The translations under genes were made by a program, and so were the position numbers. DNA of 63,146 nucleotides, counting the filler, from Reticulomyxa filosa (Eukaryota > Protista > Foraminifera), in assembly GCA_000512085.1 (NCBI GenBank). It is 13 parts of 13 records of this genome, joined end to end, with 100 filler letters (N's around TTAATTAATTAA, not from the genome) between each part and the next. Parts side by side here need not be neighbours in the genome. Positions count along the whole stretch, not along the records: positions 54,606 to 56,467 come from ASPP01028392.1; 12 more parts are not named here. One strand, given 5' to 3'. Shown piece after piece: positions 20,905 through 62,318 of the stretch. Every line of letters starts with the position of its first letter. The first letter of the stretch is position 1. The notes beneath the pieces were generated by a model that saw only the letters and a program-made list of their open reading frames with translations, was not told where the DNA came from and searched no databases.

Positions 20905-21427
20905 TACACAGGATTTGAATGTCCATTAAATGATTGAATTTGTTGTGTTATCAACGTCCCATACACGAACTGTTCTATCATTTGATCCAGAACAAATGAA
21001 TTGACAATCATCAAATGTTGAATAATCAATACTCCACACATAACTGGTATGTCAGTGAATGTATTGATTAATTTGGATGAGCGAAATGTATCAAACATAA
21101 AGAGTGTAGTTGCCTGCGATGATAAAAAGTTACAAATATATTTGTATATTTTGTTGTAATTAAATGAAAGAACAAAAATAAAATAAAACGTAACATAATT
21201 GACAACTAGTTTATCGAAATGATTTATCCATCCAAATTTAATGTGCAATATTCGAATCCAATGCTGAATAATGACTTGGATTTCGTTTTTCTCTGGCTAA
21301 TTCAATCACAAGCCACATATAATAAATAAAATAAAAACTTGAAGAAATCAACTTTTTATAAATTTGGAATAAAACTTACAACTACTAGTTGAGGTAAAGT
21401 TTGTTCATGATTGATAAGAGCTGTCAT
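20905..21427 (-). pseudogene. WD40 family gene 5' part with N-terminal QHWIR..GWI..FDK module, frameshifted
   Basis: Exon 21195-21296 = PEKNEIQVIIQHWIRILHIKFGWINHFDKLVVNY. The next exon has indels in TFT(G)HTSYVWSIDYSTFDDCQFICSGS. Confidence 0.75.
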
Positions 21428-54605: not shown

Positions 54606-54862
54606 CACCATTTGTAATAAAGAACAATATTGGTAATTCAAATGTGATAAGTTCCGGATCAAGTGATAAAACAATTCGTTTTTGGGATATTCGTTCAAAT
54701 AAGAGTGAATTGCATGTGATGAAAGTAGGTGAAGGAGTATTATGTCTTAAATTTATGGAATTAAAAAGAAAAATAAATAACAATGAACAAAAATCAAATG
54801 TTAATATTTGTATTAACTTATGTCATGGTTTAGCTAATGGCTCAATTTATGTTTGTGGATGA
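54606..54862 (+). CDS. 3' end of WD40 family protein
   Basis: SSGSSDKTIRFWDIRSNK...LCHGLANGSIYVCG, paralogous to 8780-9240. Confidence 0.85.
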
Positions 54863-55245
54863 ACATATATGAATGATGTTTTTTGATTTATCCCTTTTTT
54901 TTTAAATGAAAAGACATTGACAACTTTTTTACTTTTATTCCTTAAAAAATTTAATACGTACTTCAAAAAAAATTAGTTAAAATTAATTTTAAATTAGTAA
55001 CGTATTTTCGAAATATTATGCATCAAGTGTAGATTTTGAGAAAATATTTATGTCATCAAATGGAAAATGGAAAAATATGAAAATATATTCGATTATGAAC
55101 ATCAAACAATAATATACATTAGTAATTAAGTAGGAAAAATCATAAATATTATTTGTTTGATTAAAAAAAAAAATGGATAAATTTCATAATTATGAATAAA
55201 ATCAAAAACATATTTAAAGATAGCATGGGTTCATTATAATGTATT

Positions 55246-56449
55246 TCATCTAATGTATTTCGTGATAATTTTATCAAACTCATCAATCCATCCTAATTTT
55301 ATCTTTAAAATTCGAACCCAATGTTGAATAGTAAATTTTATTTCTTTTTTTGACTGTTCAAAATTTATTATTTGTGCAATATAATTTATTTATGTCTAAT
55401 CAAAATAAACAAACAAATAAATAAATCATTACCAACAGTGAAGAATCCCATACACGCATTTTAGTCTTAATGTGAGTTGATACTGTTGCAAATTTATTAT
55501 TTTGTCCTCCAATAATATGTATATGATTATCTTCTTCACTCAATATTGCAGTACAATTAAATAATCGAGTGGGTAAAGTGTTTTCAAATGTCATCCATTT
55601 TGTTTTCTCGAATTGAATACTTGTGCACTAATTTTGAAGCAGTATTTTATAAATATTCCATCCACCAAATAACAAGATGATATCATTGATACACACATAT
55701 GCATATTCACAGAATAGTGCAATATCATCACAAACAGGTAATTGATGAAATTGAAAATTATTTTTATCTTCATCATATTCAATTGATAATCCTATATTTT
55801 TATGAAACAACAGCATTTGATAATTTTGTTTATTCGTTTTTATCATTTCTTGTCCTTGTCCATTTTCTGCATTTGATACAAAGCAATAATAATATATTTC
55901 ATTTTCAATTGGTAGAATATCATGTTTAATGAATTGAAATGTATTTAAATCAAACACACTAATATATTTATCTCTACAAGTGATAAATAGCAAATTATTG
56001 TTGACTCCACCAATCACTGCACGCGCTCCTCGATAGTCTTCATAACCTCTATCGATCATAATTGGATTACCATAATTGTCTGTGAATCGAGTCCATTTAT
56101 TGTAATTGTTTAATTCATTTGATTTGTTTGATTTCTTACTCCAAACACTTACATATTTCATTATCAATGTATGTCTTTTAAAATATGGAGCTCCACCAAA
56201 AGATAATAAAATGACTTGATTTTTGTCTTTTTTGTTATCTACCAATTTCACTACACAGTGTCCATCTAATTGAATATGACTTATATACTGACAAATAAAC
56301 TTGTATTCGTTTTTGAGTATATGATAAGAATAACAAGCTCTTTGTTTGTAACCTCCACAAATGAGGAGTTCGTGTTTGTGTAGCACACATTGAGCATGCT
56401 GAAATGGAATGGGCAAATTTTTCAAACGTTGAAAAGTTTGGTTGCTCAT
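55246..56449 (-). CDS. Kelch-like beta-propeller protein with C-terminal QHWVR..GWIDEFDK module; frameshift near 55640 (possible pseudogene)
   Basis: LLICGG, LLSFGG, LLFGGW and IHIIGG blades; last exon 55246-55353 = SKKEIKFTIQHWVRILKIKLGWIDEFDKIITKYIR*. Confidence 0.85.
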
Positions 56450-56467
56450 ATTGTTAATGTTGAGGAA

Positions 56468-61699: not shown

Positions 61700-62318
61700 T
61701 GTGACATTTTAGACTGTCAAAAAAAAATTGCTTTTTAAATTTCAAAGTCCCCAGGTTCCTATTGTCCTGTTAAAAAACCTACTACAAGCATTTTTCCATT
61801 AGGTGAAATATCCAAGCATTTTGCAGAAAAATTAGATCCTTCTAATTTTTTGATTTCATTTCCTGTGTTTACATCTCATAAACATATTGTTTTGCACTTG
61901 AACATGACACAATAGTTTGTCCATCTGGAAAATATTTTACATCACCTGAATGTCCAGTCAATATGTTTATCTCTTTTCCTGATATTATATCCCATATTCG
62001 AACTGTTTTATCAGATGATCCAGAACAAATGAATTCACAATCATCAAATTTTGAATAATCAATACTCCACACAGCCTCTGTATGTCCAGTGAATGTGTTG
62101 AGTAATTTAGATGATGAACAAAATGTATCAAACATGAAGACAGTAGACATCTATGTTAAGTAATATTGGAATGTTTTGATTGTTATTTTAAAAAAAAGAA
62201 GAACAAATGAACTAACATAATTGACGACAAGTTTGTCAAACTCATTAATCCATCCTAATTTGATTTTCAATATTCGAATCCAATGTCGTACGATTACTTG
62301 AATCTTTTCTTCTTCGGA
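61700..62318 (-). pseudogene. WD40 family gene with N-terminal RHWIR..GWINEFDK module, disrupted
   Basis: Exon 62217-62318 = SEEEKIQVIVRHWIRILKIKLGWINEFDKLVVNY, then WD40 repeats with a deletion (GHSGDVKYFPDG) and a frameshift (SSAKQYVYEM*). Confidence 0.8.

What the first reader, a model, noticed from the sequence alone, without database searches (positions are those of the whole stretch)
55246..55353. One exon-encoded SOCS-box-like module shared by WD40 (N-terminal) and Kelch (C-terminal) propeller families
Seen: nearly the same peptide, I(Q/R)HW(I/V)RILxIK(L/F)GWIxxFDK(L/I)(V/I)xxY, occurs three times on different contigs. At 21195-21296 and 62217-62318 it is a 102-nt phase 0-0 exon before WD40 repeats. 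At 55246-55353 it is the phase-0 last exon after a Kelch propeller. Known: symmetric exons are the classic unit of exon shuffling, and cullin-RING substrate receptors pair a short adaptor box with WD40 or Kelch propellers. Inference: QHWIR echoes the BC-box LQHLCR and the DKLVVNY helix echoes the box end. This would be a lineage-specific adaptor motif on a large, rapidly turning-over receptor set, possibly for defence. All three carriers show lesions, consistent with birth-and-death evolution.
Basis: partly seen in the sequence, partly recalled or inferred. Interest (0 to 1): 0.8.

Follow-up and report, generated by a model that had tools for sequence, protein, structure and literature searches.

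The report
Foraminiferan exon-encoded helical hairpin module
This is the last exon of a stop-codon-damaged Kelch gene of the foraminiferan Reticulomyxa filosa; it encodes a 33-residue two-helix module, so far seen only in this species, that hundreds of genes place after a Kelch propeller, before a WD40 propeller, or between the two, and it shows no similarity to a SOCS box.

Summary
The piece is a 1,862-bp Reticulomyxa filosa contig. On the minus strand, a Kelch exon (56449-55433) carries one in-frame TAG at 55630-55628. A 79-nt GT..AG phase-0 intron follows, then the last exon (55353-55246), which encodes SKKEIKFTIQHWVRILKIKLGWIDEFDKIITKYIR-stop.

A profile of this peptide finds 197 representative proteins among 1.84 billion. 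All 30 that I looked up are R. filosa. They have three layouts: Kelch-module-stop, module-WD40 and Kelch-module-WD40.

In five of the six genes mapped that have WD40 downstream, the module is a separate 99-105-nt phase 0-0 exon. Its intron positions match those of the Kelch-only genes.

AlphaFold2 models the module as two helices outside both propellers, at moderate confidence.

The SOCS-box reading is not supported:
- The BC-box pattern occurs in 0 of 154 modules, and LPxP in 0 of 154.
- There is no recurrent Pfam match and no credible PDB match.

The tripartite genes allow a simpler origin than exon shuffling: both two-part families could have kept the middle exon of a Kelch-module-WD40 gene.

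Function is untested. I infer a protein-protein docking or self-association hairpin. This is a real, undescribed, lineage-restricted module of moderate interest.

The parts
55246..55353 (-). Last exon of the Kelch gene: 35 codons plus a TGA stop (55248-55246). It encodes the 33-residue helix-turn-helix module (core IQHWVRILKIKLGWIDEFDKIITKY).
   Evidence: translation, acceptor ag|TCA. (module HMM E 4.9e-21, same acceptor context as L003, L004, L005). (47-sequence alignment; invariant I, G, W, F, I).
55354..55432 (-). 79-nt GT..AG intron, phase 0, between the Kelch exon and the module exon.
   Evidence: The donor ..S-L-L|gtaatgattt and acceptor aaattttgaacag| are conserved in paralog loci L003, L004, L005 and in the tripartite gene L001.
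55433..56449 (-). Kelch-propeller exon (ATG at 56449; 339 codons), in one frame but interrupted by a stop.
   Evidence: ORFs. (99% identical to RFI_32181; 360 paralogs). (weak Kelch Pfam matches). (paralog P0011 modelled as an all-beta domain at pLDDT mostly above 90). (1017 nt, frame 0, one stop).
55628..55630 (-). In-frame TAG inside the conserved stretch that follows the LFGGW motif. It is either a pseudogenising lesion or an assembly error.
   Evidence: In paralogs this stretch is coding. The public model RFI_32181 (P0001) omits this stretch, which I read as a 54-nt intron that deletes the conserved LFGGW segment.
54608..54862 (+). 3' end of a convergent neighbour gene: the last WD40 repeats of a P0186/P0159-like gene, a family that carries the same module at its N-terminus. 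The N-terminus is off the contig.
   Evidence: WD40 Pfam. (tblastn: 43-69% identity to the C-termini of P0186 and P0159, E about 1e-14).

Best explanation
What is shown: the feature is the terminal exon of a Reticulomyxa filosa Kelch-family gene that carries one premature TAG. The exon encodes an orphan 33-residue module (consensus E-E-I-Q-x-I-I-Q-H-W-I-R-I-L-x-I-K-L-G-W-I-x-D-F-D-K-x-V-x-N-Y), modelled as two helices joined at the invariant G-W. In this genome the module always sits directly after a Kelch propeller, directly before a WD40 propeller, or between the two in single tripartite genes. In most mapped genes it is its own phase 0-0 exon, with the same intron positions in all three layouts. 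Kelch-only genes replace the 3' donor (KY|gt...) with 1-3 codons and a TGA. What is inferred: the two-part families most simply arose from, or exchanged with, a Kelch-module-WD40 architecture and kept the middle exon. Each helix has a recurring hydrophobic stripe, and further conserved hydrophobic positions (I19, I25, L27, W29, I30 of alignment A5) fall off helix 1's stripe. The module lies outside both propellers and is as conserved as they are. I therefore infer that it works as a protein-protein interface. My preferred version is a self- or cross-associating hairpin, as in LisH-type two-helix dimerisation motifs, or a docking helix pair for one common partner. Such an interface would couple a variable propeller to another propeller or to shared machinery. 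It is not a SOCS box.
For: Identity and anatomy. Family size and distribution: 48 of the 120 best Kelch paralogs show the tail in their annotated proteins. Two paralogs annotated without it have the intact exon downstream (L003, L004). The profile search finds 197 representatives at E<=1e-3. WD40 Pfam matches occur in 96 of 147. Architectures among 153 hits: 68 module-WD40, 29 Kelch-module, 14 Kelch-module-WD40, 42 with neither, mostly short fragments. All 30 representatives looked up are R. filosa. Exon structure: 99 nt in L001, L002 and L009, 102 nt in L006, 105 nt in L008, all phase 0-0, with the upstream donor ..QL|gt shared. Structure: AlphaFold2 of Kelch-module-WD40 (P0150:320-990) has mean pLDDT 90.4. 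The module forms helices 343-359 and 363-377 at pLDDT 55-73, followed at once by the first WD40 strand. PDB WD40 matches span 375-671 only, so the module lies outside the seven blades. In the Kelch-only model the tail does not pack on the propeller (pLDDT 28-43). Constraint: tail pairwise identity is 70% against 67% for the propeller. Module dN is below Kelch dN in 6 of 6 paralog pairs. W, R, G-W-I, F and Y are present in 90% or more of 107 modules from families that are otherwise under 50% identical.
Against: Module pLDDT is only moderate, and in the Kelch-only model no helices were predicted. I could not inspect whether the hairpin touches the WD40 propeller in the model. The Kelch tree that places tripartite genes at deep or basal positions is weakly supported and unrooted, so the direction of change (loss versus fusion or shuffling) is not settled. 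In one tripartite gene (L007) the module is not a separate exon. Only 30 of the 197 hits were checked for organism.
Confidence: 0.6

Rival explanations
1. SOCS-box-like (BC box plus cullin box) adaptor motif that recruits Elongin B/C and Cul2/Cul5, making the Kelch and WD40 proteins cullin-RING substrate receptors.
For: A short helical box next to WD40 or Kelch propellers is the classic substrate-receptor layout.
Against: BC-box pattern in 0 of 154 modules, LPxP in 0 of 154, Cul2-box pattern in 2 of 154 (definitions). No SOCS_box or VHL Pfam hit for any of 107 modules at E<=10 or for the window exon. No PDB chain at E<=10 except a chance rBAT hit, although many SOCS-box complexes are in the PDB. 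Q and H vary across the family (Q/H/E/K and H/Y/N), while the invariant W and R fall at positions the BC-box pattern leaves free. The module is N-terminal in most carriers and internal in tripartite genes.
Confidence: 0.04
2. DCAF-type helix-loop-helix or H-box: a helical anchor directly N-terminal to a WD40 propeller that inserts into DDB1, making the proteins CRL4 substrate receptors.
For: DCAF H-box helices sit at the N-terminal edge of the WD40 domain and have only moderate sequence conservation, with key Leu and Arg residues (PMC3928422). Here a helix pair with a nearly invariant Arg abuts the first WD40 strand. One subfamility-sized group, including the neighbour gene in this piece, has two consecutive WDIR (WDxR) repeats.
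Against: Paired WDxR occurs in only 8 of 36 multi-repeat carriers, and 22 of 36 have none. No sequence match to DDB2, CSA or DCAF1 chains in the PDB. The Kelch-only carriers have no WD40 domain to supply the second half of the bipartite DDB1 interface described in PMC3928422. The apparent ..K-L-G.. resemblance to viral and cellular H-boxes rests on my memory, not on a test.
Confidence: 0.1
3. Purely structural element: an N-terminal cap or linker of the WD40 domain with no interface of its own. In Kelch-only genes it would be a leftover of truncated tripartite genes.
For: Wherever anything lies downstream, the module is followed within about 8 residues by the first WD40 strand. Kelch-only genes look like tripartite genes cut at the module's 3' splice donor. 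The tail is unstructured in the Kelch-only model.
Against: In Kelch-only paralogs the tail is as conserved as the propeller (70% versus 67%) and its dN is lower in 6 of 6 pairs. The G-W-I, F and I positions are invariant over 47 tails, which a relic would not keep. Its pLDDT (55-73) is far below that of the adjacent propeller (96-98), which argues against tight packing.
Confidence: 0.15
4. The locus itself does nothing: it is a dead copy (pseudogene) in a birth-and-death family, so this particular exon makes no protein.
For: There is an in-frame TAG at 55630-55628 in a conserved strand region. Family dN/dS is 0.59-0.82. Other decayed pieces lie nearby, at 55044-55114 in this window and at L001 1066-1167.
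Against: There is a single lesion in 374 codons. The splice sites and the module exon are intact. A draft-assembly error cannot be excluded, because no reads could be laid. This rival concerns only this copy, not the module family.
Confidence: 0.6

Closest known systems
LisH motif (LIS1/PAFAH1B1, WDR26, muskelin)
   Same: From my knowledge of the family: a roughly 33-residue two-helix unit placed before WD40 or Kelch propellers that dimerises into a four-helix bundle. Here there are also two helices and 33 residues, directly before a WD40 propeller. The LIS1 propeller is among the best structural matches to the WD40 part (7mt1, Z 45.6, rmsd 1.3 over 294 residues), level with WDR5 and G-beta.
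   Different: No LisH Pfam match in 107 modules at E<=10. By my recollection of the LisH consensus, helix 1 here is about five residues longer. Dimerisation is untested.
SOCS box / VHL box (WSB1, ASB, SOCS, pVHL)
   Same: A short helical box appended to a repeat or propeller domain, C-terminal in the Kelch carriers.
   Different: BC box, Cul5 box and Cul2 box consensus motifs are absent. There is no profile or PDB similarity. The module is N-terminal or internal in most carriers. It is 33 residues in two modelled helices, against about 40 residues for a SOCS box (PMC4812663).
H-box / helix-loop-helix of DCAF substrate receptors (DDB2, CSA, DCAF1)
   Same: A helical element immediately N-terminal to a WD40 propeller with a conserved Arg. 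A subfamily has paired WDxR repeats (PMC3928422).
   Different: WDxR is absent from most carriers. The module also occurs on Kelch-only proteins. No sequence similarity was detectable, and DDB1 binding is untested.
F-box of F-box/WD40 and plant F-box/Kelch proteins
   Same: A helical adaptor box combined with either WD40 or Kelch propellers in large, fast-evolving families.
   Different: No F-box Pfam match. One public record is named 'F-box and wd40 domain protein', but no F-box is detectable in its first 100 residues. From my knowledge of the family, an F-box is longer, has three helices, and sits N-terminal in both combinations.

Membership tests
SOCS box | BC box (S,T,P)LXXX(C,S,A)XXX-hydrophobic (PMC3355856) | tested here: not met
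   0 of 154 module sequences match. The definition was read.
SOCS box | Cul5 box with LP-hydrophobic-P downstream of the BC box | tested here: not met
   0 of 154.
SOCS box | Profile similarity to Pfam SOCS_box or to solved SOCS-box chains | tested here: not met
   No Pfam family for the window exon at E<=1. No SOCS_box hit among 107 modules at E<=10. PDB profile searches gave nothing, or one chance hit at E 0.41.
SOCS box | Binding of Elongin B/C and Cul5 | not testable with these tools
   No multimer prediction or experiment was available.
VHL box | Cul2 box hydrophobic-PXX-hydrophobic-XXX-hydrophobic, 8-23 residues after a BC box | tested here: not met
   The pattern occurs in 2 of 154 modules, and without a BC box.
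F-box | Match to Pfam F-box profiles | tested here: not met
   None among 107 modules at E<=10. None in the N-terminal parts of P0134, P0127, P0222 or P0272 at E<=1.
DCAF (DDB1-CUL4 associated factor) | Alpha-helical H-box at the N-terminal edge of the WD40 domain | tested here: inconclusive
   Helices 343-359 and 363-377 abut the first WD40 strand. The H-box has too little sequence consensus for a sequence test (PMC3928422).
DCAF (DDB1-CUL4 associated factor) | Two adjacent WDxR motifs | tested here: not met
   Two or more WDxR in 8 of 36 carriers with four or more repeats, and none in 22 of 36.
LisH motif | Match to the Pfam LisH profile | tested here: not met
   No hit among 107 modules at E<=10.
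LisH motif | Two-helix unit that homodimerises | not testable with these tools
   The two helices are modelled. Dimerisation could not be modelled.
Kelch beta-propeller family of R. filosa (the host gene) | Kelch repeats forming a propeller, and close paralogy to annotated Kelch motif family proteins | tested here: met
   360 paralogs at E<=1e-3, the best at 99% identity (RFI_32181). Kelch Pfam matches in this copy fall below threshold, but paralogs carry precomputed Kelch domains. The P0011 model is all-beta over residues 20-331 at pLDDT mostly above 90.

The most novel reading that the evidence does not exclude
The module is a heterotypic zipper. Kelch-module and module-WD40 proteins, each encoded by hundreds of fast-evolving genes, would pair through their shared hairpin to rebuild in trans the two-propeller receptor that the tripartite genes encode in cis. 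That would give a foraminiferan a combinatorial recognition repertoire, for example for non-self or cargo recognition, built from one symmetric exon.
Probability: 0.12. Interest if true: 0.75.

Novelty: new variant of a known kind. Interest (0 to 1): 0.42.

Why it matters
Short helical boxes next to beta-propellers (LisH, F-box, SOCS box, H-box) are how eukaryotes plug variable recognition domains into shared machinery. Here a box with no detectable relative has spread, as a single symmetric exon, over at least 197 distinct protein clusters and probably several hundred genes in one foraminiferan. All three possible layouts are still present in the genome. That makes it a clean natural case for asking how new domain architectures arise: exon shuffling, or fission of a tripartite gene. 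It also gives a concrete handle, a 33-residue bait, for finding what these very large Kelch and WD40 families of Reticulomyxa do. It also shows that the public annotation misses the module in many Kelch genes.

Tried and rejected
- SOCS, VHL, F-box and LisH homology were rejected by motif counts and by Pfam and PDB profile searches.
- 'Part of the propeller' was rejected. The module is modelled as helices outside the region matched by solved WD40 propellers, and it does not pack on the Kelch propeller.
- A ciliate-type genetic code as the explanation of the TAG was rejected. It is the only in-frame TAA or TAG in 339 codons, the many Gln residues use CAA/CAG, and a paralog gene ends in TAA.
- The IQ calmodulin-binding motif (IQxxxR) was considered but not pursued. 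The Q position varies (Q/H/E/K) and the best-conserved part is KLGWIxDFDK.
- The ESM Atlas search of the module gave only generic helical hairpins and the family itself.
- Foldseek and VIA searches of the two-propeller model returned only generic WD40 propellers.
- Word-based searches with the module region reached few proteins.
- Literature: no paper in the library mentions Reticulomyxa together with Kelch, and the seven that mention it with WD40 look unrelated from their titles and abstracts. The genome paper is not held.
The pieces were searched separately, and intact paralogs were used for folding.

Full report
**Source and anatomy**

The piece (54606-56467) is AT-rich, with GC 18-30%. The 273-residue ORF on the minus strand is 99% identical to Reticulomyxa filosa RFI_32181, whose contig is 1,862 bp, the length of this piece.

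The gene on the minus strand is laid out as follows:
- It starts at the ATG at 56449 and runs in one frame to 55433 (339 codons).
- It has one in-frame TAG at 55630-55628.
- A 79-nt intron follows (GT at 55432-55431, AG at 55355-55354).
- The last exon is 55353-55246. It reads SKKEIKFTIQHWVRILKIKLGWIDEFDKIITKYIR and ends in TGA.

I searched the pieces separately. Intact paralogs served for folding.

**The host gene**

There are 360 R. filosa 'Kelch motif family' paralogs at E<=1e-3. An AlphaFold2 model of the intact paralog P0011 is all-beta across residues 20-331, with pLDDT mostly above 90.

The TAG lies just after the conserved LFGGW motif, in a stretch that is coding in all paralogs inspected. 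The public model P0001 lacks this stretch. From the DNA I read this as a 54-nt intron that deletes the conserved segment, which looks like an annotation workaround. This copy is therefore probably a pseudogene, unless the draft assembly is wrong.

**How common the tail is**

- 48 of the 120 best paralogs show the tail in their annotated proteins.
- Others end in translated intron. For two of these (P0002 in L003, P0003 in L004), the intact module exon lies downstream with the same acceptor context, aaataatgaa(c/t)ag|TCAAAA.
- Annotation therefore under-reports the module.
- A 47-sequence alignment (A1) has 76% mean column identity and invariant I, G, W, F and I positions.

**Where else the module occurs**

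The A1 profile was searched against 1.84 billion representative proteins. It found 197 proteins at E<=1e-3, and 45 at E<=1e-10. All 30 that I looked up are R. filosa. WD40 Pfam domains occur in 96 of the 147 best hits.

My own classification of 153 hits:

| Layout | Count |
|---|---|
| module-WD40 | 68 |
| Kelch-module | 29 |
| Kelch-module-WD40 | 14 |
| neither (mostly short fragments) | 42 |

The module is always C-terminal to Kelch and N-terminal to WD40. Regions N-terminal to the module in some WD40 carriers have no Pfam match.

The convergent neighbour gene in this piece (54608-54862, plus strand) is the 3' end of a P0186/P0159-like WD40 gene. That is a family that carries the module at its N-terminus.

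**Exon structure**

| Locus | Layout | Module exon |
|---|---|---|
| L001 | Kelch-module-WD40 | 99 nt, phase 0-0 |
| L008 | Kelch-module-WD40 | 105 nt, phase 0-0 |
| L002 | module-WD40 | 99 nt, phase 0-0 |
| L009 | module-WD40 | 99 nt, phase 0-0 |
| L006 | module-WD40 | 102 nt, phase 0-0 |
| L007 | Kelch-module-WD40 | not separate; lies inside a 282-nt exon |

The acceptor precedes the same Ser or Pro codon in each case. The upstream exon typically ends ..QL|gt, in the Kelch genes and even in the WD40 gene L002.

WD40-bearing genes continue KY|gt... Kelch-only genes instead read KY plus one to three codons and then TGA. Kelch-only genes thus look like the tripartite architecture cut at the module's 3' splice donor.

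A FastTree of Kelch domains puts the tripartite genes at deep or basal positions. Support is weak and the tree is unrooted, so loss from a tripartite ancestor is the simpler reading but is not proven.

**Structure**

The AlphaFold2 model of P0150:320-990 (Kelch-module-WD40, 105-row alignment) has mean pLDDT 90.4. The module forms helices 343-359 and 363-377 at pLDDT 55-73. The first WD40 strand (380-387) follows immediately.

Solved WD40 propellers align to model residues 375-671 only. Examples are 5yzv_C (Z 46.3, rmsd 1.2, 289 residues aligned) and 7mt1, the LIS1 propeller (Z 45.6). The module therefore lies outside the seven blades.

In the Kelch-only model the tail has pLDDT 28-43 and no contacts are implied.

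**Constraint**

- In Kelch-only paralogs the tail is 70% identical pairwise, against 67% for the propeller.
- Its dN is lower than the Kelch dN in 6 of 6 pairs. Kelch dN/dS is 0.59-0.82. With only 99 nt in the module, this comparison is noisy.
- Across 107 modules from families otherwise below 50% identity, W, R, G-W-I, F and Y are each present in 90% or more.

**Test of the SOCS-box idea**

I used the published definitions: BC box (S,T,P)LXXX(C,S,A)XXX-hydrophobic, Cul5 box LP-hydrophobic-P, and Cul2 box hydrophobic-PXX-hydrophobic-XXX-hydrophobic (PMC3355856). A SOCS box is about 40 residues (PMC4812663).

Counts over 154 module sequences:

| Motif | Matches |
|---|---|
| BC box | 0 |
| Cul5 box | 0 |
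| Cul2 box | 2 |

No Pfam family recurs among 107 modules even at E<=10: no SOCS_box, F-box or LisH. The window exon has no Pfam hit at E<=1. PDB profile searches give nothing, or one chance hit at E 0.41. The conserved residues are not the BC-box positions. The homology claim is therefore not supported.

A DCAF-like H-box remains a weak possibility. A helix with a conserved Arg sits directly before WD40 (PMC3928422). However, paired WDxR repeats occur in only 8 of 36 carriers, and Kelch-only carriers lack WD40 altogether.

**Mechanism (inference)**

Four facts point to an interface rather than a passive linker:
- Each helix has a recurring hydrophobic stripe, and further conserved hydrophobic positions (I19, I25, L27, W29, I30 of alignment A5) fall off helix 1's stripe.
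- The module lies outside both propellers.
- It is only moderately confident as a monomer.
- It is kept under constraint in both split families.

I favour self- or cross-association, as in LisH-type motifs, or docking to one common partner. In the divergent tripartite genes a highly charged stretch (for example P0242 residues 285-335) precedes the module. I read that as a likely helical or coiled-coil segment, which fits an oligomerising stalk.

None of this was testable here.

**Novelty**

There is no Pfam model and no PDB relative. No paper in the library mentions Reticulomyxa together with Kelch, and the seven that mention it with WD40 look unrelated from their titles and abstracts. The genome paper itself is not held. 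The module is an undescribed, lineage-restricted sequence family of a familiar functional kind.

Noticed in passing
window 54608-54862 (+): The convergent neighbour is the C-terminal end of a WD40 gene of the P0186/P0159 type, the family that carries the same module at its N-terminus. Its last repeat reads IRFWDIRSNK (a WDxR motif). A Kelch-module gene and a module-WD40 gene thus lie tail to tail on this 1.9-kb contig.
   Followed up: partly
window 55044-55114 (+): A short frameshifted relic (SSNGKWKN.. / ..ENIFDYEHQTII) resembles residues 86-109 of P0150, in that tripartite protein's N-terminal 320 residues, which have no Pfam match. tblastn E 4e-4 in this small search.
   Followed up: partly
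window 55575-55650 (-), and P0001: The public model RFI_32181 lacks the stretch that holds the TAG. I read this as a 54-nt intron that deletes the conserved LFGGW segment. The model also uses a later donor, so it reads VMIYLF before the module. Both look like annotation artefacts.
   Followed up: partly
L003 2158-2259; L004 2394-2495: Paralogs annotated without the module (P0002, P0003) have an intact module exon downstream. In my set, 67 of 139 Kelch rows had no module match in the annotated protein. Several of these, P0002 and P0003 among them, end in translated intron, so the module is more common than the public proteome shows.
   Followed up: yes
L001 1066-1167 (+): A decayed copy of the module exon, with two in-frame stops but still flanked by ag| and |gt, lies upstream of the P0150 gene. 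It is a relic of turnover.
   Followed up: no
L006 2568-2629 (P0186); P0248 residues ~405-420: Several public WD40 models read through the intron that follows the module (for example ..NYVTLFFFYYLFI.. and ..IYIYIYIYLHMN..). This inserts spurious hydrophobic stretches between the module and the first WD40 repeat.
   Followed up: partly
model of P0150:320-990, residues 375-671: The WD40 propellers of this family are highly regular. Their closest solved structures include a prokaryotic WD40 domain and designer propellers (5yzv_C at 35% identity, 7big_A at 41%, 2ymu_A). The origin of this WD40 type in R. filosa may be worth a look.
   Followed up: no
Kelch exons of window, L003, L004, L005: Pairwise dN/dS of the Kelch propeller is 0.59-0.82, which is high for a folded domain. 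This could mean relaxed constraint, many dead copies, or diversifying selection on the propeller surface.
   Followed up: partly
P0127 (1021 aa): One public protein holds two modules (residues 31-64 and 789-822) in the order module-WD40-Kelch-module-WD40. It is probably two adjacent genes fused by annotation. It would be a convenient single chain for testing module-module pairing by folding.
   Followed up: no
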